Source of the DNA: Fonticula alba ATCC 38817
Taxonomy: Eukaryota; Protista; Nucleariida
Reading direction: 5' to 3' (one strand)
DNA: 49,268 bases
Assembly (NCBI GenBank): GCA_000388065.2
Contig: KB932205.1
Below, piece after piece: positions 602 through 46,415 of the stretch (position 1 is its first letter; the number at the start of each line of letters is the position of its first letter). A program made the position numbers and the translations under genes. Under the pieces are notes generated by a model that saw only the letters and a program-made list of their open reading frames with translations, ran no database searches and was not told the origin of the DNA.

Positions 602-1001
602 NNNNNNNNNNNNNNNNNNNNNNNNNNNNNNNNNNNNNNNNNNNNNNNNNNNNNNNNNNNNNNNNNNNNNNNNNNNNNNNNNNNNNNNNNNNNNNNNNNN
701 NNNNNNNNNNNNNNNNNNNNNNNNNNNNNNNNNNNNNNNNNNNNNNNNNNNNNNNNNNNNNNNNNNNNNNNNNNNNNNNNNNNNNNNNNNNNNNNNNNNN
801 NNNNNNNNNNNNNNNNNNNNNNNNNNNNNNNNNNNNNNNNNNNNNNNNNNNNNNNNNNNNNNNNNNNNNNNNNNNNNNNNNNNNNNNNNNNNNNNNNNNN
901 NNNNNNNNNNNNNNNNNNNNNNNNNNNNNNNNNNNNNNNNNNNNNNNNNNNNNNNNNNNNNNNNNNNNNNNNNNNNNNNNNNNNNNNNNNNNNNNNNNNN
1001 N
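602..1001. other. Assembly gap; further gaps at 11324..11488, 26970..27093, 43238..43372, 46070..46208
   Basis: Runs of N. Each abuts an (AC)n tract or G/C-rich runs. None falls inside a predicted exon. Confidence 0.99.
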
Positions 1002-9949: not shown

Positions 9950-12178
9950 ATGGCCACTGCCGGTGATATCGTTCTGACGGTGGTGACGGGTGTCTTCCTG
10001 TTGCTGATCATCGTCGCGTCGATCTTTGGCCTGGCTCACTTGCAAGACCCGCTGGAGCGCAAGGCCGCCTGGTTCCCGAAGGTGGTGTGCATCATGGCCG
10101 CGGTCACCAGCGCCGTCATGATTCTGCTGCTGCCCCTGGATGTGGCAGGCCGCAAGCCGGTGGTATGTGCACATATGCGACCACACGACCATCCTCCCCC
10201 CCCCCCCCCCCCCCCCGCCACCGTGGCCCCTTCCTGACACTCGCCTCCCCTTGGCCCGCGCACCAACAGGGCACTCCCCCCTTCATCCCGGTCTACCTGC
10301 TCACCTTGATTGCGTACGGCCTGTCGCTCTTCCTGCTGGCCTTCCTCATCCCCCTGGCCTTCCTTCACTATGATGCCCTGGAGGAGCCGGAGCACGATGT
10401 GGACACCGTGCTGAAGAATGCCTCGCAGGGGCGCTCTTCGGCCGGGGCATCCAAACAGCTCTTCCATGCGCTCAAGTGGACGCTGCCCTTCACCCTGGCC
10501 CTGGTGGCTCTTGTGGGTGGTCTTTACTACGCCTATGGCTACTCGCGGCTGCCGACCGCCTTCCTGGAGAGTGTCGGCTCGACGGTGGCCGGCCGGGCCA
10601 CTTGTGTTGCGGCCGGCGACTGCCTGGCCTGGACGCGCTTCATGTAGTACGTATCCCGGCATGGGCATGCCCGCCGGTGGGCTTGGGTCTTCTGCTTCTC
10701 CGCGCCCCATCGGGGCCCTTTTCTTTCTTTTTCTTTTTTTCTATCTTCCTCCTCCTCGCGCGATAAGCCGCCCGGGCCCCCGTTTGCCCGAATATGTCTA
10801 CCCTCCTCACACCGAAGTACTTACACCGCTGGCGGGCTCCCCTGGCAGCATCCGCATCAATCCCCTGCTCTATGGGGTGGCCATTGTCAACCTCATTGGC
10901 ATGGTCTTCCTGATGCTGTATGGCGGTGTGGGCCTGATTTGCCTGCCCCTGGACCTGCTTCGGTCCTTCATCAACCGGCCTCGGGCCATGTCCATCTCGG
11001 CTGTGGTGGATGCCCGCGCGCGACTGTACACCCGGTCGCAGGAGCTAACCACCGAGGCACAGAAGCTGCTCGCCGAGCGGGATGAACTCCGTGCCAAGGG
11101 CGGCTTCTTGAAGAATCTCACCCGCAGCGGGGCCCTGGACAGCCAGTCCCGCCGGCTGGCGGCCAAGGTCTTCGAGCTGGAGGAGCAGGCTCATAAGCTG
11201 GAAATTGCGCGCTCCATTTCCGAGGAGAGTGTCCTGGTCCAGGTGCGTGGCCCGCCCTTTACCCCGTGGTCGGGGCCAAATGCCTGGGGGGGGGGGCGGG
11301 GGGGCAGCGTGCTGGCGTCCCCCNNNNNNNNNNNNNNNNNNNNNNNNNNNNNNNNNNNNNNNNNNNNNNNNNNNNNNNNNNNNNNNNNNNNNNNNNNNNN
11401 NNNNNNNNNNNNNNNNNNNNNNNNNNNNNNNNNNNNNNNNNNNNNNNNNNNNNNNNNNNNNNNNNNNNNNNNNNNNNNNNNNNNNNNNCGCGCACACACA
11501 GCCCGCGCCTTCGTGACATCCATCTGACCGGGGGCGAAAAAAAAATGGCCCACCACCCAACAGTTCTTCAAGCTCGCCCTTTCCATCATCGGGTTCATCT
11601 TCAGCATCCTCTGGCTGCTGCATCTGGCGTTGTACTTCGCGCCGGTTACCTTCGGCATGAAGCCCGTATCGGCCTTCATGAATGCCGTCTTTGCCGGGCT
11701 CTCCAAGGTTCCCTTCCTGGGCCCGGCCTTCTACGCCATCTTCGCCTTGCATCTGCTGCTGTGCCTGGCCCATGGGTCGGTTCGGCTGGGCCGGCTGTCA
11801 TCGATCCTCGGCGCGGTGCATTCCATTCGCCCCGGGCGGACGCTGACCTCGGCGCTGCTGTTCCACTCGTGGCTCCTGGTGGCCGGGGCCCAGGCGGTCT
11901 CGCATGCCGGGGCGCGGGTGTTCGGGTCCTACGCGCGGGACACCGCCTCCGGGCGCATTGCCAACACCCAGCTGGCCAACCTCTCGGGCGGCGTGGGCCA
12001 TGGGTTCGATGCGCTCATCTGCCTGATGGGCGTCATGGCCGTGGTGACTGCCCTGCTTGCGTGCATCCTCCCGGCTCGCAAGCGCAAGAAGAAGGTCAAG
12101 CTTGTGAGCGAGAAGGAGCGCGCCCGCAACCGCCAGAAGGAGAACAACTATGAGATGCGCCAGCGCGCGGGCAAGTGA
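9950..12178 (+). CDS. LIMR/LMBR1-family multi-pass membrane protein (532 aa)
   Basis: join(9950..10162,10270..10646,10849..11242,11564..12178) = 1599 nt; intron 3 spans an N gap. Family motifs ILLLPLDVA, LIPLAFLHYDA, LYGGVGLICLPLDLLRSFINRP, a coiled-coil loop, and VFGSYARDTA. About 9 hydrophobic segments. Confidence 0.9.
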
Positions 12179-25789: not shown

Positions 25790-27167
25790 CGAAGGAAGCG
25801 AAAGGGGAGCAACGAGGAGGGCATGTGGGAGGTGTGGCAAAGCTAGGAGGGGGAGGGGGGGGGGGAGGGGGCAGGGTGTCGGCACTGGGGTTCCACACAA
25901 GCCGAGACGCATGCTTGAATGACGGCCGGCGCATGCGACGCCCGGTGCGAGGGCCGCCGGCCGCCGGCCGCCGGCCGCCGGCGGGGATGGGATCGATCTT
26001 AGTCCGATCGCCCGAGCGGATGGCTCCCGGGGTCCCGGGGGCCGGGCCTCAGATCGCCGGGCGAGCGGGGGTGGGCGGGTGGGGGCAGTGGGCCCGGCCG
26101 GGCCAAGCCCCCGGGGGCAATGTGAGACGCCGATCCGCTGGCCCCTCCGGCAGCCAATTTCACACACAAGTGGCGCGCGCATTCGCGTTCGTCCGCCGCG
26201 GGCTGCCTGCCAACGGCCGGCCCCGGCGCCACTGCCGACGGAGGGGAAACGTGATACGGCAGCTCAGCCTGACCTGTTCTGAGCCGGCGCCGGAGTGCGG
26301 CATCCTAGGGGAATTGGCGTCTGCCCGCCAAATACGCCCCCCCCCCCCCGCCCCTTCCCCGCTGCCAGTGTGTGTGTGTGTGTGTATGTGTACAAGACAC
26401 GCATGTGCGGCGTGTGTTGTGTATCTCTGTGATGGGGCCGGGGCCTCAACACGCCCGACCCTGGAGGCGCAGCGTCAAAAAATGGCCCCCACCGCGGCTC
26501 GGACATGCCGGTGTGCGTCGCCGCTCCGCGCCCCCTCGCGCCCGGCCCATTCGGCAAATGAGCGCACATTTGGCGCGAGCCAGCTCCCTTTGGCCATCAC
26601 TTCCCCGCGCCGGCGGCCGGCTTTCATGCCTGCACAGCCAGATTGCCCCCCCCCCCCCCCCCCCTGCTCGCGTCCGAAGGTGACTAGCTGGGCGGGTGCC
26701 CTCCTTCGCGCCGCCTTGATCTCGGGCATTTTTCGCCGGCCCTACACTCGCCCCCGCCATTCGGACCCGGTATTCTTCTTCTTCTCCTCCTCCTCCCCCT
26801 CCCCCTCGCGCTGCCCCGGCTCCCCTCCACATACACCTCCCCGCCGCCATCCTTCTCGCGCTCGACCAGCTTTCGCTCCCTTCGAGTGTGTGAGAGAGAC
26901 CCCTCCCCCTGATCCCGGCGCCCAGCGGCCAGCCGCAGAGCAGGTAGCTCCTGCTTCCCCCCCCCTCCTNNNNNNNNNNNNNNNNNNNNNNNNNNNNNNN
27001 NNNNNNNNNNNNNNNNNNNNNNNNNNNNNNNNNNNNNNNNNNNNNNNNNNNNNNNNNNNNNNNNNNNNNNNNNNNNNNNNNNNNNNNNNNNNNCCCTATG
27101 CATCCTCCTCGTCCTTCAGACATCTGACTCTCCCTCTCGGTGCCCCGCCCGGCATTTTAGACACATC

Positions 27168-35908: not shown

Positions 35909-37517
35909 CGGCACAAGAGCCGAGTGTGTCTATGTGCGTGCGCATGCCCGGCGGAGGGGCCGACGAGGCGGGGGGAGGCTGCAGAACCACACCCATCCGA
36001 GCTCGGCGCCGCGCGATAGGCCCCCTCTCTCTCTCCTCGCCCCCCTGTTTGGCTGTCCGCGAGAAGGCGTGTGTGTGTGTGGGGGGGGGGAGCCGGCCCG
36101 GGTGCGCCGCCCTCCCATAATGTCGGCTCGCCTGGGTCCGCCGCACGAATTGCCAACGGCCTGCTTCGCCGGCCCCGTCCTGCGGCCCCCCCCCCCCCCC
36201 CCCCCCCCCCCCGCCCCCAGGTGACAGTTGGGCGCGGGTCGTCCCTCATTCTCGGCTCCGGGGGCCTTTTGGTGCCCGGGCAGCCGCGAGACGCCGGGCC
36301 GGTGCCGCGGCAACGCCAGGTCGCTGGGCACGGGCACTCTCCCCCCGCGGCCCATTCCTGGCCCCCGGGCCTCTGCCGCTCCGAGCCCCCGGCGTGGGGG
36401 GGGGGGGGGGGCCTCCCCACCCCGTTGTTCAATACATGCAAGCGCAGACACGCACTTGCTTCTCCGGGCGCTAGAGACGCCCCCCCGGGTCCCGGCCCCA
36501 GCCCCAGCCCAAGAGGCGTGTTTCCTCCTATCGCATCATACCGTGTGCGCGCGCGCGTGCGGAAGGCGGCCATTTCCAAAGGGCGGGAGGGGGGCGCCGG
36601 CGGAGTCGCGGGCGGGGGAATGCACCAGCCCGCGAGCCTGCGTAAGTGCGTCGGTGCCCCGCCCCCACCCCTGGCCCGGGGGCGCGGGGCATGAACAATG
36701 TGCGGCGAATGATTCATCAGCCCCAATTGGCCACCCATCGCTGCGTCCTGTCAGAGGCAGCCCCACAAGCATGCGGGGTGTTTCCTACACGCGTGCGGCA
36801 TGAGCGAGGAGCACCCCGCATGCTTGCGAGCGCGAGCGCGCAAGCGCGGTGAGGGCGCGTAAACAAAAATGCCCCGGGCCGGGCCGGTAGCAAGCCGGGC
36901 CGGGACTCCGGCCGGAGGCATCATGCCCGGCCGGCCCCCGCTGGCGCCCCTTTCCAGGCCCGACGCGGCGCCCCGCGCACCCCGAGCTGGCTGGCCTCGC
37001 CAGTCCCTGCGGAGTGCCCCCCCCCCCCCGAGTCCGGGCGCCCATTCCTGTGCCGTACCCCCCTCGCACATTGGCCAGTGTCGGCCAGACGGCTGCCCCC
37101 CCGCCCCCGCCCCCGCCCCCCCCCCTGCCTCGGCCCGCATGCTTCCGCCGCCGCCGCCGCCGTTTCATGCCCCGGGGCCCGGCTCTGTGGCCGGACACCG
37201 CTGGCGTGGCCAGACCGACCTTGCAATCGGATTCTCCCCGATCTCCTTTTGAGAGGGAGCGCCTCCGTGGTTCGTCGCCCGGGGCGGCGACCGCCATCCC
37301 CGCTCCGTCCTCCTCCTCGCCGCGCCGCCCCCTCCTCCTCGCCGCGCCCCCGCTTCTCCTCCCCTCCCCCTGTCTGCTCCTCGCCCCTGCCCCGAGGGAG
37401 GCCGAACTTGAGGTCTCGCGCGCGCGCGCGATCGCTCCCCTCCTCCTTCCCCCCCCCCCACACGCACACATCCCTCCTCTCTCCCCCCCTCTCTTTCTTC
37501 CTCCCTCCTCCTTCACC

Positions 37518-38426
37518 ATGACGGACGTATATGCCCCACTTACGCACGCGTATGAGGCCTTCACGGCTGCGCCTCCTGGAGAGTGGTCCGTCCTCTGACT
37601 CGGTCCTGTCGCTGTCTCTTGCTGGCCACGCGCTCACCCCTCCCCCTTTGCCCCATTGGTTCCCCCCCCCCCCGCCAACATCGTTGTAGGTTCTCCGTCC
37701 GGATCGCCGGCAAGGCCGGGCCGCAGCTCGGCCATTCCGGGTCCGGCGGTTTGGACGGCCTCCTGCAGGTCCGCTCCTCGGCGGACTTGGTGTGCTTTTA
37801 CTTCCTGCTGCACCACCCGGCCGCCGCCCCTTCCGGGACCGAGGAGGAGCCCGGCAGCCAGCAGGTCCTCCTGCATGTTGTTGGACCGGATGCCCCACTG
37901 ACAGACCAGGCCCGCGGTCTGACCTTCCTTCGGCATGTCATGTCCACATTCAAAGTGCGCACCTTCCCCCCCTCCCCCCACCCCCCTTTCGACAGGCCCC
38001 TTCGGCCCGTCCCTCCTCATCCCTCCCCATCTCCCAGCACACTCACTCTCCGGCCCCCCTCTCTCCCTCCCTCTTCCCTGCCATCCTGCCCCCATTCGGG
38101 CATGGTGCGGTGCTTGTCCAACCAGGTGGACTACGTGATTCCGGTTTCCTCGCTGGCGCAGATCACCCCCGAGATGCTGGCCGAATCGTTGCGGGCACCC
38201 ACGGCATACTCCTCTTCCCCGGTGGCCGGCTCCTCACAGTCGCTGCTGACCACCGGTCTGCAGAAGACCCTTTCCCCGGCGGGCTACCGGTACAGCGCCT
38301 TCGCCACGCCGACCCTCTCCGGTGCGTCCGCACTGTCCCGCCTTCGGCCCTCGCCCCCTTGCCCCTCGCCCTCCCTCTCCCCAGTTGCGTGTCCCATCCT
38401 CCGGACTGACCCTCGGGCGTGCCTGT

Positions 38427-38457
<31 letters not shown>

Positions 38458-41400
38458 CTGCCGGGCGCTCAGTTTTCCCGACCGCATCGAGGTACACCCT
38501 CTCGTCCCTTCGTTCTGTCCCTTGTTGCCCCTTCTTTTCACTCACCACTGCACGCTTGGAACTCACGGCCACACCGCCTCGGACGATGCCAGCTCGAGCC
38601 CAGGCAACCTGTCTCCGCGGAGGACGGTCTTCTGCCCCTACTTTCCGGCCTACACGGCCATGCCGCGGAGCCACCCGGATACCGAGCCGCCCGGTGACAT
38701 GGCCGAGGAGCAACCCGCCCCGACGCACCGGCCCCGCAGCGGAGGCGTCCCCCTCCTGGGCAAGGCTGCGGCACAGAATGCGGCCGCGGCCGCGGTCGCC
38801 GCCACCGCCGCCACTGCCACCGCTGCGGCCCCGGTTGGTGTGTCGGTCAGCGATGGGCCGACTCTTCGCCGGAGCGCCTCCATCTCGTCCAGTGCCTCGC
38901 GTGCTTCGTCGGTCTTCTCCACGGCCTCCGTCAACTACTCCTTCACGCGTCGGGACTCTGCCACCTTCCAGCTGCTCTCCTCCACCACGGCCCCCTTCCA
39001 TCAGGGGGCCTCCCCCGGGGCGGACAAGGGTGCGGCGGCCGGGCCGGCGGCGGCCGAGTCGCACCGCGGCGCCGGGCTGCCCCCCCCACAAATGGTGTAT
39101 CACCGCCATATCCGCTCGCGCGAGGATGAGATCTCCCTCTTCCCTGGCGACCTGGTGATCCCGTTGAACGAGGCGCCGGACTCGTTGGGACGCGTCAAGG
39201 TACGAAAAGGCCCGGCGGGTGGCCACCTCATTCCCTCCTGATCGGCGCCCCTCCCTCCCGGTTGTTGCTTGTGACCATGCCTATCTGACGCCTGTGATCT
39301 CCCTTTTTGCCCGGCTCCGCTCTTCTCTCCGCCCCTCTCTCCGCCCCTCTCTCCGCCCCTGTCCGGCACAGGTGATGCACGAGTCGCGCGTTGGGTATAT
39401 CTCGCCAGGGACCCTGCGCGGCCCGTCGGCCATCGGGACGGCCGCGGCCGGTGCCGGCGCCTCGCCCGCGGCCGCGACCACTTCCGACGGGGCTTCCGGG
39501 TCCTCGGACGCCAAATCCACATCCGATTCCTTCTTGGAGTCCAACAATCCGGAGGTCGTGCCGTACTACGGCAGCCTGGCGGCCTACTTCGACTCGGACC
39601 TCTACCGGAGTGATGCTTGCAACTGGCTCCTCCGCCACAACCTGGCCTCGGCCGTGCGATCCTACAATGAGGGGCTGCCCATCGATGTGGCTTCCGAGCT
39701 GGACCGTCTGTCACAGCAGATGCCCAGCCTCATGTACCCGGCGGTCCAGCGCCTGGTCTACCTGAATACCTTCCTTCGGGTGCGCGCCTTCCTCGGGCAG
39801 CCGATCCACTCTTCGTCCGCGGACAATCCCTTCATCATCCCGCACACGGCCATCAGCACGGCCGGGCTTCTGGCCTCGGGCCAGGTCTCGGCTGCCAGCC
39901 CCATCGGCCCTGGGGGGGCCACCACGCCGACGCGCCTCCCGGCCCCGACAGGGTCCACTGTGCAGTATGTGCCTGGCGCGCTCCCTCCTCCGTCTGCTGA
40001 GGGGGCCTCTTTTCTCTCTCTCTCTCTCTCCCTCTGCCCTTTTTCCATTCAATCTGCTCCTTCATGTATTCTCACCTCCCGTGCTCCTTCCCCACACAGG
40101 ACCGCCAAGACCGTCCCCGGTGGCCCGCCCTCGTCAAGTTCAGTGGGTCGTGCGCCCAGCGGCCTGAACCTCCGGTCATTCTTCCGGCCAACGCGCCGCG
40201 ACGCCAACAGCAGCAGCTCCAGTGTGCCGCTCTTCGTCTCGGCGGACTTCTTCCAGCAGGTGGCCAAGCCGGTGCATGACGCCGAGTACGTCCTCCTCCC
40301 TGTTCCTCCGTCTATCTCCCTCCCTCTCTCTCTCTCTCTCTCTCTCTGTCTCCCTTCCGCGCCCCCTCCACCTCAGGTGCCGAGGCCCTCCGTCTGATCC
40401 CCCCCCCCCCCCCCCCGCCCGACCACAGCAAGTACATCAAGATCACATCCCCCTTCCTGCACCCGGCACTGGCCAGCGCCGAGGGTGCCGACCCGACCAC
40501 CGTCACCTCGTACCTCATCCATCCTGATGCGTACAAGCACTTGACCGAGATGCGCAAGACCGCCTTCGACGAATTCCTCTCGCTGACGACCGTCGGCAAG
40601 CGGTCGAATCTCATCCGTCTGCCCACCGGCTGGCAGTACCCTCACATCGACTACAGCAACGACCCGGATTACTTTTGCCTGCCCGGGACCGGTGGCAGTG
40701 GCGGCGGCGGCGGCGGCAGCGGCAGCATGCGGCTCCTGCCGGCCGGGCGCAAGGGCGGAGCCGAGCACCACCACCAGGCAGGGGGCGCCGGCGGGCCGCC
40801 CGAGGCGGCCGGTGGCCCCGGTGCCACCCCGACCAGCGTCCAGCTGGGCAGCTCTCTCCATGCGTGGGTTCTCTTCCTCGGGCACAAGCCCTTCGATTAT
40901 AGCTTCCCCCTGCCGATGGCCATCACGTCGATGATTTCGGAAATCCGCCGGCAGAATGGCCTCCAAACCGAGGGGCTCTTCCGAGTGCCGGGCAATGCCC
41001 GGCGCATCAGCCAGCTGAAGGAGGTCATCGAGAAGGACGGCCACATGAAGAACTATGTCCAGTCCAATCCCACGCTCGGCATCAGTGTCCACGATGTGGG
41101 TGGCCTGCTGAAGCTCTTCCTGCACAAGCTGGCCGACCCGCTCTTCACGAGCGCGCTGTACAAGAACTTCCCCGACGTCACAAGTGCGTCCTGCCGCCAA
41201 ACTTCTGCCCGTCCCCCCCCCCCCCCCTTCGCTGGCTGCTTTTCCTTTCCTCTTCTTCCCCATCGCCCTTCCCTGCCCTTGGCCGGGGAGGGCCCTTTCC
41301 TCGGTGTCTGGTGGCACAAGATGCGACAGTGCCGTCTTTTTTTTTTTTTTTTTTGTTGCCTGCAGCCCGCCCCTTCGCTGTGTTAACCAACCCCTCTGCC

Positions 41401-42263
41401 TGTCTCTCGCCCTCGCCCTCCTCGCTCCCGTGCCACCGCCGCCCCCTCGCCCTCTCTGCTTCCCTTCCGCCCACTGCAGAGATTAGCTCCGGCACCGCGG
41501 ACCAACTGCGCGCCTTGCGGCACCTGTGCTTCCTGCTGCCCGAGCGCAACCGCCTGGTGGCCCAGTATCTGCTGGAGTTCCTCCGGTCGGTGGCCCAGAA
41601 TTCCGCCGTCAACAAGATGGACGCTCGGAACTTGGCGGTCGTCTTCGCGCCATCCTGCTTCCGCCAGCCGGCCAGCGAGAAGACCGACCAGCAGGCGGCC
41701 AAGCTCATGAAGGAGAGCAACCGCGTCATTGTCAGCCAGTATGTCCTTCAGCTGCTGATCGAGAAGTATGAGGTGCGTGTTTGGATGTATTTATATTCGT
41801 GGTGTTTTGCCGTTGGCGGTTCTTGTTGCGCCTCTCTCGGGCGGGCGCATGCACATGCACATGCGCGCGCGCGCGCGCTCACGTGGCCTCGCCCTCCCTG
41901 CCACCGGCTCCTGCTTCCCGTTTGTTTGCCACTGACGCCCTTTTCATGCACACATGTGTGCCTGTCCGTCTGTCCGCCCGTGTGCGCGTATGTGCTCGTC
42001 GACAGGAGATCTTCATGTTCCCCGAGGTGGTGCTCGAGCGCCATCCGCTCTTCCAGTCCTTAGCCACCTCGTACAGCGAGTACTTCACCAGTGCGGAGTC
42101 CGCTGGTGGCGGTGGCGCCGGAGCATCTCCCTCTAAGCCGGGTGGCGGTGCGGCCGGGTTGGCCAAGCCCGGCGCCAGTCCGGTGCTCCAGGCAGCTGGT
42201 GAACAGCCAGCTGGCGATGCCGGTTACTCAGCTGGTGATGTGCCCACTGTGGAGGCTGTCTGA
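37518..42263 (+). CDS. Multidomain RhoGAP: coactosin/Abp1-type ADF-H, atypical SH3, DLC-type SAM, RhoGAP (1079 aa)
   Basis: join(37518..37585,37690..37954,38126..38321,38473..38491,38593..39199,39372..39964,40100..40285,40429..41183,41480..41772,42006..42263) = 3240 nt. RhoGAP with arginine finger EGLFRVPGN, HDVGGLLKLFLHKLADPL, LLPERNR..LLEFL..V.....VNKMDARNLAVVFAPS. The 19-nt exon 4 is the least certain. Confidence 0.9.
39325..39360. repeat. 12-bp tandem repeat x3 (CTCTCCGCCCCT) in a RhoGAP intron
   Basis: Three perfect copies shortly upstream of the acceptor at 39371. Confidence 0.9.
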
Positions 42264-43555
42264 GTGTGCTTCCGACGGCCGTGGGGGCGGGGGATGGGGG
42301 AAGGGCTAGGGCACGTCGTGGAGCAGGAGACGCGGTTGTCCGCCACAAAGGGGGAGGTGGCCACGAGCGAAGTCGTCCATGCAAATGGTGGCGAGGTAGG
42401 AGGAGGGGCCCTGAGCGGCGCCTCTTCTTCTTCTTCTTCTCCTTCTCCTTCCTCCCTTCCCCCCCCCCTTCTTCGCCTGACGGCGGAGCATGGGTTGCTG
42501 GCTTGTCTCAAGTCACCTTCTCGTCTCCTTCTCCCCCTCCCCCCTCCTGGTCCCTCGCCACGGGATGTGGTCCTCCCCCCTCCCGGCCCTTTCTGCACTC
42601 CTCTCCAGGCGCACCCTCGTGCGGGAAGCAATACACCCTCCATATTTCCCCTCTTTCCTCTTCCCCTTGCACAGGCGGGGCTCCTCCGATTGAGGACCGC
42701 CTACTGTGTGTTGCGCACACGCACACCTTCCGCCAGGTAGACCAACGACCAAGAGAGGGAGAGAGAGAGAGAGAGAGGGCACGATGCGAGAAGTGGGAAC
42801 GAGACGCGCCACAGGATGTATTTCGGTGTCTTCATGAAGGCCGAGACGCGGGACAAAGGGTGTCTATGCCCGCGTGCGCGTGTACAGACGCACGCGTCGC
42901 GGCAAGCCCCGGGCCAGAGACCACATGGCAGCAAGAATGGCAAAAGGAAGTGTGTGTGTGTGGGGGGGGGAGGGGAGGGGAGCTTGATTGTGCGCAGGGG
43001 GGTGTCTCAATGCGCACAGTCAGGCCCTTCCTTCAAGGAAAAGAGCAAACAAGGAGGGAGAGAGGGGGGGGAGGGAGGGAGGAGCGCATCACCACAAGGG
43101 CAAGGAAAAGGCGTGCAGGGGGGGGGGGGGGGGGGGGGAGGGGAGGGGGAAGCACGCACAGGAGCCAGGAGAAAAACTTAGGGATACCCATCTTGAGTTC
43201 AGCAACCCTGGAAGCTGGGTTCGGGACTGGGGGGGGGNNNNNNNNNNNNNNNNNNNNNNNNNNNNNNNNNNNNNNNNNNNNNNNNNNNNNNNNNNNNNNN
43301 NNNNNNNNNNNNNNNNNNNNNNNNNNNNNNNNNNNNNNNNNNNNNNNNNNNNNNNNNNNNNNNNNNNNNNNNCCCCCCCCCCCCAACAAGGTGTGCCCCA
43401 GCCAGCGGTTCATCCCACATGGGATCTCGCCCCCCTGGCTGGTCTTGTGCGCTGTTTGGGCGCGCCGCCCCCCGCCGCCACTTTGGTTCCGCAAATGAAG
43501 AACCCGTTTGCGTGCGGGAGTGGGGCCGGCGCCCGGGCCGTCGGTGCGTGCAGAC

Positions 43556-46324
43556 TCACGCGTTGGACAGGACCTCCAGGTAGACCGTGCGACTGGGGGA
43601 GTTGGCCGCCGAAGCCAGGAGCCGGCCCAGCTGGCTGTCCGACTGGAGGTTGCCGCAGGAGGTGAGGTCTGAGGAGCCGGCGCCGGCGCCAGGGGTGAAC
43701 CCCTCAAACTGGATGTCCACGGCTCGCAGGGGGGCCGATGCGCCGGGCCGGGTGCCATTGGCGGCGGTCAGCTTGGCGGCCGCCAGGCGCCGAAGCTCCC
43801 CGAGCCCGACGCCGGCCGGCGCGATCCGCAAGGTCACGAAGACCGCCTCCCCGAGGGAGGGATGGCTGATTTTGACAAGGACGGGCGCGGCGCCAGCGGG
43901 GGGCGGCGGGCCGCCGGCGCGCGGCGAGGCAATCCCCCCGGCGGCCGGTGGCGGTGGCGGCCGCGGCGTGACCGGCGCCGAGGCCGGCGGCCGGCGTTCC
44001 GGCAGCAGGGTCGGCGATCCGGAGGGCAAATCCAGAGCCGAGCGGCTGCTGATGCCCCCGGCGCCCGGGCCACCGATGGTGGTGGTCGCCAGCTGGGGGT
44101 CATTCTTCAGGTCGATCTCCCGGGCCATGAAGAAGTCCCCGACCAGGGCACAGCCCAGCAGCTCGGCCGGCAGACGTGCCGGCTCGAAGAATTCCGTCAG
44201 ATAGGTGTCGATCTCGGCGCGGCGCTTGACGTGCGTCGACTCGCTGACAAGAAGCTGGCGGGGTGCCGGGGAGGGTGGGGCAGAAGGGGCGAGGGACCAT
44301 GGGTTAGCGGCGCCGAGCGGGACTTCGTCGGGCGGCGGGGGCGACACAGCAGCGGGACATGGCACGCACCCGGTGGCCTGGCAGGTAGGGAATGGGGCGG
44401 AAGCTGCCGCGGGCAACTGCCTGCGCCGGGAAGAGGGCCAGCAGGCTGACCTGGAAATCGAGGAAGTTCTGGTGGGAGCGCCAGATGAACCGCGGAGGCA
44501 GGCCCCCATTGAAGGTGAGCTCGCAGACGAAGAACACCGTGCGCGAATCGGCCTGGCGCTCGTGGCGGATGCACCGGGCCTTGGCCGGGATCGGGATGGT
44601 CGATGGCTGGCGCCCACGAGCCGAGCGGTCGGACTGATGGCGCATGGCAGGCATGCCACGCATGGATGTGTGTGTGTGTGTGTGCGCACACACAGGAGGA
44701 GCACGAGGGCCGCCCGGCGGGGGAGAGGCGCGGGTTAGAGGGAGACAGCCGGCTCGGATCAAGATGGACAGTGCCGGGGGGGGGGGGGGGCCGGGCGGGA
44801 GGGGGTGCACGTACGAGGTCACCGGTGGAGCCGGTGGCCGAGGCGGCGGGGGCCGCGGCCGCGGCAGGCGTGTGGCTCGGCGGGAGGGGCGCCTTGGCCG
44901 GGGCCGGGGCCGAGAGGGTCCGAGCGATGGCAGGCGGCTGGGCGGCCGCGGCCGCGGCGGCGGCGGCGGCAGCATTGCCGCGAGCCGGCAGCGGCGGAGG
45001 GGGGCCAGCCCGTGCGGCCGCCAGGTTGCCAGCCGGCGGAGGCGAGGGAGACCGGCCCGGCGGGACCGGCGAGGAGAAGGTGCTCGGCGGCGGGGTGAAG
45101 GCAGCCGTGCGCGAGGGAACCACCGGGGGAGGCGCCGGCGCAAAGGCCGACTTGGTCGGTGGAGGGGCGAAGCCGGGGGTGGCGCCGGCGGGCGGCCCGG
45201 CAAAGGCCGCCCGGGCGGAGGCCACGCTGCCCGAGGGGGTGGGCGAGCGCGAGGTCATCGGGGTGAAGGGAGCCGGGGGGGGCGGAGCCGCGTGGTGCCC
45301 ACCGGCCGGAGTGGTGGACGATGATCGGGCTGGGGGCATGGCAAATTGGCCAGCCCTGCTGGCGGTGGCCGGTGCCGGGGTGGGGGCAGCGCGCGGCGAG
45401 GCCACCGGCAGCGAGTCGAGCGAGCGCGTCCCCGGGCCGGCGGCCGACCCCATCCCGGCGGCCGCGGGCGGCGGGAAGAAGGACGCCGGCGGGGGGCTGA
45501 ACTTGCTGCTCCCGGGGCCGGGGCCCCGTGCGGAGGCGATGCCACTGGGCCCGGCCTCGCGCAATGGTGTGCCGTAGATGCCGCCTCGGGTCGGGGGCGT
45601 GGCCGCCGAATGGGCCGGTGCTTGGGAGGTGGTGGCGGTGGCGGTGGCGGTGGCGGCCGCCGGCCCCGGGGCCGCCTGCTTCAGGTAGCTGCTGGGGACA
45701 TACCCGGTGGCCGACGAGGTGGCCGACTGGACCCACACCCAGTCCTGGTCCTGGAGGTTGACCTCGGCGTCAGCCAGCACCAGGTCGCCCAGGCGCAGGG
45801 ACAGCTCCTCGGCAGACACGGCGGAGTAGTCGCCGAGGGCCTCGAAGGTGACCTGCCCGGTGGCGGCCGGTGCGGCCGGCGCGGCGGCCGCGACCGCGAC
45901 CGGGACCAGGACGCTGGCGCTCAATACGCGCGGGGGGGTGAAGTAGCTGCGCGGGACCATGCCAATCTTGCCGGCGAAGTTCTGCACCCGATACCAGTCA
46001 TCATTCTCCACATTGACCAGGATCATTTCCTCGGACTGAGCGGTGTGAGCAGTGGGATGGCTCGGGGGGNNNNNNNNNNNNNNNNNNNNNNNNNNNNNNN
46101 NNNNNNNNNNNNNNNNNNNNNNNNNNNNNNNNNNNNNNNNNNNNNNNNNNNNNNNNNNNNNNNNNNNNNNNNNNNNNNNNNNNNNNNNNNNNNNNNNNNN
46201 NNNNNNNNGGCGGGGAGGCGGGAAGGCGGGAAGGCGGGGGCCGCGGGCGTACCTCTTCAAAGGAAAGTTCCTCCGGGGCGTTGGCGCGGAGAGACCAACG
46301 GGCGGCCACAACGAAGGAGGCCAT
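43556..46324 (-). CDS. BEM1: Bem1/Scd2-like polarity scaffold, SH3-SH3-(Pro-rich)-PX-PB1 (751 aa)
   Basis: complement(join(43556..44254,44370..44633,44815..46035,46253..46324)) = 2256 nt; intron 1 spans an N gap. SH3a EELSFEESEEMI..DDWYRV..GMVPRSYF; SH3b ALGDYSAVSAEELSLRLGD..DWVWV..GYVPSSYL; PX IWRSHQNFLDFQVSLLALFPAQA..IPYLPG..RRAEIDTYL..FFMAREID; PB1 VLVKI..LQSDSQL. The 3' end may extend further (see findings). Confidence 0.87.
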
Positions 46325-46415
46325 CGTTCGCTGTTGCTGTGGTTGGCGCGCAAGCCGCGACGCAGTCAACGAGGGGGCGGGGCGCGGTGGGTGGAGCGTG
46401 TACGTGCGGTGCGTA

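What the first reader, a model, noticed from the sequence alone, without database searches (positions are those of the whole stretch)
37518..42263. Apparently novel architecture: ADF-H (coactosin/Abp1-like) + atypical SH3 + SAM + RhoGAP
Seen: the N-terminus MTDVYAPLTHAYEAF..EWFSVRIAGK..LGHSGSGGLDGLLQ..VLLHVVGPDAP..QARG..ITPEMLAESLRAPTAYS aligns by eye end-to-end with coactosin (MADVSSTELKAAYDEV..NWCLFKYEGK..LSGKGSGGFAELAQ..KVRKSSGADYS). An SH3 follows (~39088-39420; REDEISLFPGDLV..VGYISPGTL), then a SAM and a RhoGAP with an intact Arg finger. Established: ADF-H occurs in cofilin, twinfilin, GMF, coactosin and Abp1/drebrin; I know of no ADF-H-RhoGAP fusion. The conserved F-actin-site Lys/Trp (KF..W) appear replaced (QQ..V), and the SH3 lacks the ligand-binding Trp and PxNY. 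Inference: an actin- or Arp2/3-sensing GAP that switches off Rho/Rac/Cdc42 at actin structures, possibly through repurposed pseudo-domains.
Basis: partly seen in the sequence, partly recalled or inferred. Interest (0 to 1): 0.8.

Follow-up and report, generated by a model that had tools for sequence, protein, structure and literature searches.

The report
Orphan amoeba RhoGAP, possible ADF-H head
This is one real, expressed ten-exon gene of the amoeba Fonticula alba that encodes a switch-off enzyme for Rho-type GTPases; its front end may be a very diverged copy of an actin-binding (ADF-H) module, but that could not be proven here.

Summary
The gene is real. One spliced RNA contig of 3.65 kb, seen in two samples, joins all ten exons (37518-42263, + strand). 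It gives a 1079-aa protein identical to the database entry H696_03308 of Fonticula alba, so the two-gene reading is refuted.

The RhoGAP domain is solid: Pfam E = 1.2e-41 for aa 807-960, with Arg finger R830, Lys873 and Asn947 in place.

- **Sequence searches.** Pfam finds nothing but RhoGAP. phmmer against solved structures finds no ADF-H or SAM, and only NCK SH3 domains at E 0.27-0.84.
- **Structure.** Single-sequence AlphaFold models are poor (pLDDT 40-42), so fold searches on them mean nothing.
- **ADF-H support.** A protein-language-model search puts aa 1-150 among Cofilin_ADF clusters (98 of 100 nearest, score 0.89, 193 of 256 features shared). The predicted order of helices and strands fits ADF-H.

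I rate ADF-H at about 0.65, a degenerate SH3 at about 0.5 and SAM at about 0.35.

No orthologue was found in 1.84 billion representative proteins or in JGI metagenomes. This is a lineage-specific multidomain RhoGAP of moderate interest. The same scan noted two other supposed ADF-H fusions elsewhere in this genome; both are unchecked.

The parts
37457..37517 (+). 5' UTR (start of the RNA contig)
   Evidence: RNA contig record 1 begins at 37457 (X1) / 37459 (X3)
37518..37585 (+). Exon 1, ATG at 37518; aa 1-22 plus 2 nt (first helix of the N-terminal domain)
   Evidence: Joint 37584/37689 GT..AG (cut +1); translation
37690..37954 (+). Exon 2, aa 23-111: core of the ADF-H-like domain
   Evidence: Atlas features: 98/100 nearest clusters PF00241, score 0.86. 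phmmer against 1.84e9 proteins finds only itself
38126..38321 (+). Exon 3, aa 112-176: last strand and helix of the N-terminal domain (to about aa 140, nt 38212), then the start of the linker
   Evidence: RNA contig pieces; AF2 secondary structure E112-118 and H126-134
38473..38491 (+). Exon 4, a 19-nt micro-exon (aa 177-182)
   Evidence: 18 letters of the RNA contig (records 590-607) lie between 38320 and 38591. With this exon the frame stays open and the protein equals P0001
38593..39199 (+). Exon 5, aa 183-385: Ala/Ser/Pro/Thr-rich linker, then the first half of the SH3-like stretch (from aa 346, nt 39080)
   Evidence: composition; NCK SH3 alignment
39372..39964 (+). Exon 6, aa 386-582: second half of the SH3-like stretch (to nt 39422), a short Ala/Ser linker, and the five-helix SAM-like block (aa 436-532, nt 39522-39812)
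   Evidence: Joints; AF2 helices at aa 432-526 with pLDDT 52-54; no Pfam or PDB hit
40100..40285 (+). Exon 7, aa 583-644: Ser/Pro-rich linker
   Evidence: Joints 39964/40100 and 40285/40429
40429..41183 (+). Exon 8, aa 645-896: unassigned region 646-740, Gly-rich loop, and the first two thirds of the RhoGAP domain (from aa 807, nt 40913)
   Evidence: Pfam RhoGAP profile positions 1-82, E = 1.4e-18 on this exon alone; whole protein 807-960, E = 1.2e-41
40982..40984 (+). Codon CGA of Arg830, the catalytic arginine finger (EGLFRVPG)
   Evidence: Aligned with EGLYRVSG of beta2-chimaerin 1xa6; positions
41480..41772 (+). Exon 9, aa 897-994: last third of the RhoGAP domain (to aa 960, nt 41670), including Asn947 (MDARNLAVVF)
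   Evidence: Pfam RhoGAP profile positions 90-147, E = 3.6e-18; alignment
42006..42263 (+). Exon 10, aa 995-1079 and the TGA stop at 42261-42263: end of the GAP helical extension and an Ala/Gly-rich tail
   Evidence: Joint 41770/42004 (cut +2); ARHGAP11A alignment reaches query residue 369 of 640-1010; stop codon
42264..42612 (+). 3' UTR (end of the RNA contig)
   Evidence: RNA contig ends at 42612

Best explanation
Window 37518-42263 (+) is a single expressed ten-exon gene of Fonticula alba, H696_03308, encoding 1079 aa. Its C-terminal third is a catalytically competent-looking RhoGAP domain (aa 807-960; Arg830, Lys873, Asn947), which would speed GTP hydrolysis on a Rho/Rac/Cdc42-type GTPase. 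Ahead of it lie three hydrophobic blocks separated by Ala/Ser/Pro-rich linkers. The first block (aa 1-140) is most likely a very diverged ADF-H-fold domain, about 0.65 likely. The second (aa 346-402) is possibly a degenerate SH3, about 0.5. The third (aa 436-532) is helical and of unknown family, with SAM about 0.35 likely. Inferred mechanism, not shown: the front modules place or regulate the GAP at actin-rich structures or on partner proteins, so that Rho-family signalling is switched off locally in this filopodial amoeba. ADF-H followed by a long linker and an SH3 is the layout of Abp1/drebrin, so the protein reads as an Abp1-like adaptor joined to a RhoGAP.
For: Shown:
- One 3650-nt spliced RNA contig in two samples covers 37457-42612, with nine GT..AG introns.
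- The open frame is 3240 nt and the translation is identical to P0001, named Fonticula alba H696_03308.
- Pfam RhoGAP scores E = 1.2e-41 at 807-960.
- 45 solved RhoGAP domains match at E down to 1.2e-18, with the Arg finger and the NLAVVF Asn aligned (positions).

Indirect support for ADF-H:
- ESM-Atlas features for exon 2 alone score 0.86, share 175-180 of 256 features, and 98 of 100 nearest clusters carry PF00241.
- For aa 1-150 the score is 0.89 with 193 shared features, again 98 of 100 PF00241.
- Exon 6 serves as an internal contrast: score 0.84 but only about 110 shared features.
- The AF2 element order is H5-17, E23-30, E45-52, E57-64, E79-87, long H93-110, E112-118, H126-134. This fits the ADF-H order helix, strands, long helix, strand, helix (my knowledge of the fold).
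- Hydrophobic content is 0.31 in the head against 0.19 in the linker.

SH3: the only PDB hits at E <= 10 are NCK1/2 SH3 domains, in register. hhalign against a three-sequence SH3 profile gives P = 9e-4, against 0.58 for the control region.

Helical block: five helices are predicted.
Against: - Pfam reports no Cofilin_ADF, SH3 or SAM match for the whole protein or for the cut-out regions. HMMER's filters drop matches above roughly E 0.1.
- phmmer against PDB finds no ADF-H or SAM protein at E <= 10.
- phmmer of exon 2 against 1.84 billion representatives finds only itself and bacterial repeat proteins.
- The word-based search with aa 1-150 finds nothing.
- AF2 without an alignment gives pLDDT 42 and 40.5. 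Fold searches on the head model return unrelated folds with TM < 0.45.
- The atlas tool states that scores under 0.9 are leads only, and that a third of shuffled proteins also get ten same-family top hits.
- All five known ADF-H classes are normally caught by the Pfam model (my knowledge), so this head would be unusually diverged.
- No actin binding, GAP activity or substrate has been tested.
Confidence: 0.6

Rival explanations
1. Ordinary orphan RhoGAP. The GAP domain is real, but the N-terminal block is a lineage-specific alpha/beta domain unrelated to ADF-H, and the SH3-like and SAM-like stretches are chance resemblances within fast-evolving, partly disordered sequence. On this reading there is no ADF-H-RhoGAP architecture.
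For: No profile, pairwise or structure search detects ADF-H, SH3 or SAM. The language-model score of 0.89 is below the tool's 0.9 mark, and its calibration was not measured for parts of proteins. SH3 evidence is E 0.27 and 22% hhalign probability over only 19 columns. There are no orthologues to show conservation of these blocks.
Against: Two overlapping queries (exon 2 alone and aa 1-150) both land on Cofilin_ADF, with 175-193 shared features. The tool reports that level in 9 of 10 same-family hits but in only 1-2 of 10 chance hits or distant relatives. A non-recognised piece of the same protein shares only about 110. The predicted element order and lengths fit ADF-H. The only PDB sequences that aa 346-402 touches are SH3 domains.
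Confidence: 0.32
2. Gene-model artefact: two neighbouring genes, a small coactosin-like gene and a RhoGAP gene, wrongly merged.
For: The 195-aa low-complexity linker and the 19-nt micro-exon are the kind of places where models get merged. Assembled contigs can be chimeric (caveat printed).
Against: A single contig of even depth (about 38) carries all nine splice joints in both samples, and it starts 61 nt before the ATG and ends 349 nt after the stop. There is one uninterrupted 1079-codon frame. Intron depth is about a tenth of exon depth.
Confidence: 0.03

Closest known systems
Multidomain RhoGAPs (nearest GAP domains by sequence: beta2-/N-chimaerin, ARHGAP11A, ARHGAP35, ARHGAP21/23)
   Same: RhoGAP domain with Arg finger, Lys and Asn; 31-36% identity over the domain.
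   Different: None of the nearest proteins shares anything outside the GAP domain. Their accessory domains are C1/SH2, PDZ-PH, PX-PH, LIM or ankyrin.
Abp1 / drebrin / mAbp1 class of ADF-H proteins
   Same: Order of parts, if the calls hold: N-terminal ADF-H, long low-complexity linker, then an SH3. ADF-H classes as listed in PMC2447895.
   Different: Here the SH3 is followed by a helical block and a RhoGAP. The head is not recognised by the Pfam ADF-H model. The SH3-like stretch lacks the conserved Trp pair and the Pro-x-x-Tyr. There are only four Trp in the whole protein and no acidic Trp motif.
Coactosin
   Same: Single ADF-H of about 140 aa.
   Different: That match has E 0.25, TM 0.2 and 17% identity on a poor model, so it is not evidence. 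Coactosin is a stand-alone protein.
DLC1/ARHGAP7 (SAM-RhoGAP-START) and yeast Boi1/2 (SH3-SAM-PH)
   Same: SAM ahead of a RhoGAP (DLC1) and SH3 directly ahead of SAM (Boi1/2) are known orders (my knowledge). The DLC1 GAP domain matches at E = 2.9e-14.
   Different: The SAM here is not detected by any search. There is no START or PH domain.
Class IX myosins (actin-binding motor + RhoGAP)
   Same: Precedent for joining an actin-binding module to a RhoGAP in one chain (my knowledge). The Myo9b GAP domain matches at E = 5.8e-14.
   Different: The actin-binding part there is a motor domain, not ADF-H. The atlas hit of exon 6 to myosin-head fragments shares too few features to count.

Membership tests
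RhoGAP (PF00620) | Profile match above Pfam's gathering score | tested here: met
   142.4 bits against a cut-off of 24.5, E = 1.2e-41, aa 807-960 covering profile positions 1-147 of 148
RhoGAP (PF00620) | Catalytic arginine finger and the stabilising Asn/Lys | tested here: met
   R830 in EGLFRVPG aligns with EGLYRVSG of beta2-chimaerin. N947 in MDARNLAVVF aligns with MNAENLGIVF. K873 lies in LLKLFL
RhoGAP (PF00620) | Stimulates GTP hydrolysis on a Rho-family GTPase | not testable with these tools
   Needs a biochemical assay
ADF-H (PF00241; cofilin, twinfilin, Abp1/drebrin, coactosin, GMF) | Profile match to the ADF-H model | tested here: not met
   No Pfam family for aa 1-165, for exons 2 and 3, or for the whole protein at max_evalue 1-10; filters drop matches above about E 0.1
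ADF-H (PF00241; cofilin, twinfilin, Abp1/drebrin, coactosin, GMF) | Detectable sequence similarity to a member with solved structure | tested here: not met
   phmmer against PDB at E <= 10 returns only a dGTPase and cytochrome b5
ADF-H (PF00241; cofilin, twinfilin, Abp1/drebrin, coactosin, GMF) | ADF-H fold (mixed beta-sheet between helices, long central helix) | tested here: inconclusive
   AF2 single-sequence pLDDT is 42. The element order fits, but Foldseek and atlas shape searches give unrelated folds
ADF-H (PF00241; cofilin, twinfilin, Abp1/drebrin, coactosin, GMF) | Nearest neighbours in language-model feature space are family members (a lead, not a definition) | tested here: met
   98/100 nearest clusters carry PF00241; score 0.86-0.89; 175-193 of 256 features shared
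ADF-H (PF00241; cofilin, twinfilin, Abp1/drebrin, coactosin, GMF) | Binds G-actin, F-actin or Arp2/3 | not testable with these tools
   Needs co-sedimentation or pull-down. Residue-level comparison needs a reliable alignment, which I could not build
SH3 | Profile match (PF00018, PF07653, PF14604) | tested here: not met
   No Pfam family for aa 340-405 or for the whole protein
SH3 | Conserved ALYDY, Trp-Trp and Pro-x-x-Tyr ligand-binding residues | tested here: not met
   In the NCK1 alignment the WW pair aligns with LGR. The tail reads GYISPGTL instead of G-x-F-P-x-x-Y-V. Only the EDE(I/L)SL..GD..V part matches
SH3 | Any significant similarity to SH3 domains | tested here: inconclusive
   The four PDB hits at E <= 10 are all NCK1/2 SH3 domains, at E 0.27-0.84. 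hhalign P = 9e-4, probability 22%, 19 columns, against P = 0.58 for the control
SAM (PF00536 / PF07647) | Profile or pairwise match | tested here: not met
   No Pfam family for aa 435-535. No PDB sequence at E <= 10. The word search of 340-545 finds only itself
SAM (PF00536 / PF07647) | Five-helix bundle of about 70 aa | tested here: inconclusive
   AF2 single-sequence predicts five helices over aa 432-526, about 95 aa, at pLDDT 52-54. That is longer than a usual SAM and the packing is not trustworthy

The most novel reading that the evidence does not exclude
The head is a true ADF-H domain of a sixth, unrecognised class that still senses actin filaments or the Arp2/3 complex and is wired directly to a RhoGAP, giving a one-protein feedback from actin structure to Rho-family signalling. 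Together with the two other supposed ADF-H fusions noted in this genome (s1-065443, s1-066358, both unchecked), this would mean Fonticula re-used ADF-H as a general targeting module.
Probability: 0.2. Interest if true: 0.6.

Novelty: new variant of a known kind. Interest (0 to 1): 0.35.

Why it matters
RhoGAPs get their specificity in the cell from their accessory domains. Known ADF-H proteins fall into five classes, and none carries a GTPase regulator (PMC2447895). If the head is an ADF-H domain, this gene would be the first example of that module joined to a RhoGAP. It sits in the amoeboid sister lineage of fungi, which is useful for tracing how actin and Rho wiring changed between amoebae and fungi. 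If the head is not ADF-H, this is simply one more lineage-specific RhoGAP with unassigned regions. In either case the case shows that domain calls made by eye on a fast-evolving, 70% GC protist protein need structural proof.

Tried and rejected
1. **Pfam on every exon piece and on a read-through of exons 2-5.** Only RhoGAP was found.
2. **phmmer of exon 2 against 1.84e9 representatives.** The five non-self hits are repeat proteins matching GDGLDDLVQVRPNGDVV-type repeats or HILHH repeats in several stretches. I rejected them as spurious.
3. **Word-based searches.** With aa 1-150 nothing scored E <= 10. With aa 340-545 only the protein itself was found. With aa 640-1010 only GAP-domain relatives of other architectures appeared.
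4. **Two metagenome scans for orthologous loci.** Both were empty. In the first, several patterns straddled exon junctions, so I repeated it with exon 8.
5. **AF2 without an alignment for aa 1-165 and 345-540.** Both models were low confidence.
6. **Foldseek on the head model against PDB, Swiss-Prot AFDB and AFDB clusters, plus the atlas shape search.** All were uninformative.
7. **A profile-profile test of ADF-H.** I wanted one but could not get any ADF-H sequence as a tool reference.
8. **An AF2 run with an alignment seeded by coactosins.** I did not attempt this because it would have been circular.
9. **PDB search of aa 600-745.** It returned only noise (TAL-effector repeats, antibodies).
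10. **Literature searches** for ADF-H with RhoGAP, Cofilin_ADF with RhoGAP, and Fonticula alba with RhoGAP. Nothing relevant was found.
11. **The low-GC first kilobase of the window.** It is only an N gap.
Full report
**Gene model**

The window is about 70% GC and carries spliced eukaryotic genes. Logan contigs of two RNA samples (runs X1 and X3) hold one record of 3650/3648 nt. It lies on 37457-42612 in pieces separated by GT..AG gaps, at an even word depth of about 38, against about 4 in the introns. Six joints are listed outright, and the piece table gives the others.

Eighteen unplaced letters between 38320 and 38591 are explained by a 19-nt micro-exon at 38473-38491. The ten exons are:

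| Exon | Window coordinates |
|---|---|
| 1 | 37518-37585 |
| 2 | 37690-37954 |
| 3 | 38126-38321 |
| 4 | 38473-38491 |
| 5 | 38593-39199 |
| 6 | 39372-39964 |
| 7 | 40100-40285 |
| 8 | 40429-41183 |
| 9 | 41480-41772 |
| 10 | 42006-42263 |

Every intron is GT..AG, and the joined frame is 3240 nt, or 1079 codons plus TGA. A phmmer search of exon 2 against 1.84 billion representative proteins returned a 1079-aa protein, P0001, at 100% identity. P0001 is letter-for-letter my spliced translation. It is named hypothetical protein H696_03308 of Fonticula alba, and UniRef calls it a Rho-GAP domain-containing protein.

Its refutation test "cDNA showing two separate genes" fails: this is one gene.

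**RhoGAP domain**

Pfam gives RhoGAP at aa 807-960, 142 bits, E = 1.2e-41. The intron between exons 8 and 9 splits the domain. Forty-five solved RhoGAP domains match, the best being beta2-chimaerin at 1.2e-18 and ARHGAP11A at 3.8e-17. In those alignments EGLFRVPG aligns with EGLYRVSG, and MDARNLAVVF aligns with MNAENLGIVF. The arginine finger (R830, codon 40982-40984), Lys873 and Asn947 are all present. The enzyme looks competent. Its substrate cannot be read from the sequence.

**The N-terminal block, aa 1-140**

This is the heart of the finding, and the evidence is split.

Evidence against ADF-H:
- Pfam reports no family for aa 1-165, for exons 2 or 3, or for the whole protein apart from RhoGAP.
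- phmmer against all PDB sequences at E <= 10 finds only a dGTPase and cytochrome b5, and no ADF-H protein.
- The exhaustive phmmer search finds no relative. The five weak hits are repeat proteins and are spurious.
- A word-seeded search with aa 1-150 finds nothing.
- AlphaFold2 without an alignment gives pLDDT 42.
- Four fold searches on that model return unrelated proteins with TM under 0.45. Dictyostelium coactosin did appear end to end at rank 5 in Swiss-Prot, but at E 0.25 and TM 0.2, which I do not count.

Evidence for ADF-H:
- The ESM-Atlas feature search puts exon 2 alone among Cofilin_ADF clusters: 98 of 100 nearest, score 0.86, 175-180 of 256 features shared.
- For aa 1-150 the result is stronger: score 0.89, 193 shared features, again 98 of 100.
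- By the tool's own calibration, 170 or more shared features is seen in 9 of 10 same-family first hits and in only 1-2 of 10 chance hits or distant relatives.
- Exon 6 of the same protein scored 0.84 to myosin-head fragments but shared only about 110 features. This shows what an unrecognised piece looks like.
- The low-confidence model has the elements H5-17, E23-30, E45-52, E57-64, E79-87, a long H93-110, E112-118 and H126-134. That is the order and spacing expected of an ADF-H domain (my knowledge of the fold).
- The block is markedly more hydrophobic than the linker that follows, 0.31 against 0.19.

I put ADF-H at about 0.65. [quoted passage not shown]

I could not verify that sequence.

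**SH3-like stretch, aa 346-402**

An intron splits this stretch. Pfam sees nothing. The only PDB sequences reached at E <= 10 are the second SH3 domains of NCK1 and NCK2, at E 0.27-0.84. They align in the right register over REDEISLFPGDLVIPL, but the Trp-Trp pair and the Pro-x-x-Tyr have no counterpart.

I built a three-sequence SH3 profile from P0007, P0013 and the neighbouring Bem1-like gene. It aligns 19 columns at P = 9e-4 with probability 22%, against P = 0.58 for aa 1-340 as a control. This stretch is a possible degenerate SH3 and nothing firmer.

**SAM-like block, aa 436-532**

There is no Pfam, PDB or database hit. AlphaFold predicts five helices at pLDDT 52-54. That is compatible with a SAM but equally with other small helical domains.

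**Other regions**

Region 646-740 is hydrophobic enough to fold, but it matched nothing.

**Distribution**

The nearest proteins share only the GAP domain, at 31-36% identity, and carry other accessory domains. Two metagenome scans found no orthologous locus. Full-text searches found no paper describing an ADF-H-RhoGAP protein or this gene. The architecture is therefore not widespread, but its existence depends on the unproven head.

**How it most likely works**

Shown: a single transcript and an intact GAP catalytic set.

Inferred: the front modules, joined by long Ala/Ser/Pro/Thr linkers, target or regulate the GAP. The order ADF-H, linker, SH3 is that of Abp1/drebrin adaptors. A helical block ahead of a GAP recalls DLC1, and an actin-binding part joined to a RhoGAP has a precedent in class IX myosins (my knowledge).

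The simplest model is local inactivation of a Rho-family GTPase at actin-rich sites. If the head has lost the actin contacts, the GAP would instead act wherever the head's binding partner sits.

**Context from the scan**

Notes on other pieces of this genome claim a coactosin-type ADF-H joined to a tropomodulin LRR (s1-065443) and a coiled coil-SAM-spacer-ADF-H protein (s1-066358). I did not test them. Exon 2 of this gene did not hit either at E <= 0.001 in the exhaustive search, so the heads are at best distant relatives.

**Verdict**

This is a real, expressed, lineage-specific multidomain RhoGAP. The striking part of the claim is plausible but unproven. I score interest at 0.35 and file it as a new variant of a known kind.

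Noticed in passing
window 43556-46353, - strand: The Bem1-like gene downstream is convergent with this gene. Its long ORF shows two canonical SH3 stretches (DDWYRV...GMVPRSYF and ALGDYSAVSAEELSL...DWVWV...GYVPSSYL), and assembly gaps interrupt it. I used the second SH3 in my SH3 profile. The scan already holds a note on this gene (s1-066618).
   Followed up: partly
window 38473-38491: A 19-nt micro-exon, supported by the RNA contig and present in the database protein. It is easy to miss in ab initio models.
   Followed up: yes
window 37583-39241, + strand: A stop-free stretch of 552 codons runs straight through introns 2, 3 and 4 in the coding frame. In this 70% GC genome, open frames do not mark exons. 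Nearly every frame on both strands gives ORFs of 100-300 aa.
   Followed up: yes
window 602-1001, 11324-11488, 26970-27093, 43238-43372, 46070-46208: Runs of N (assembly gaps). The first explains the apparent low-GC first kilobase in the composition profile.
   Followed up: yes
introns of the gene, e.g. 38430-38458, 40005-40030, 40320-40345, 41333-41355: The introns carry CT-dinucleotide runs and long poly-C or poly-T tracts. The read-laying tool skipped several of them as repeats.
   Followed up: no
P0001 aa 275-305 (window about 38867-38959): A serine-rich stretch with basic-residue motifs (LRRSASISSSASRASS, TRRDSATF) lies in the linker between the head and the SH3-like part. It looks like a cluster of basophilic-kinase sites. 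This is untested.
   Followed up: no
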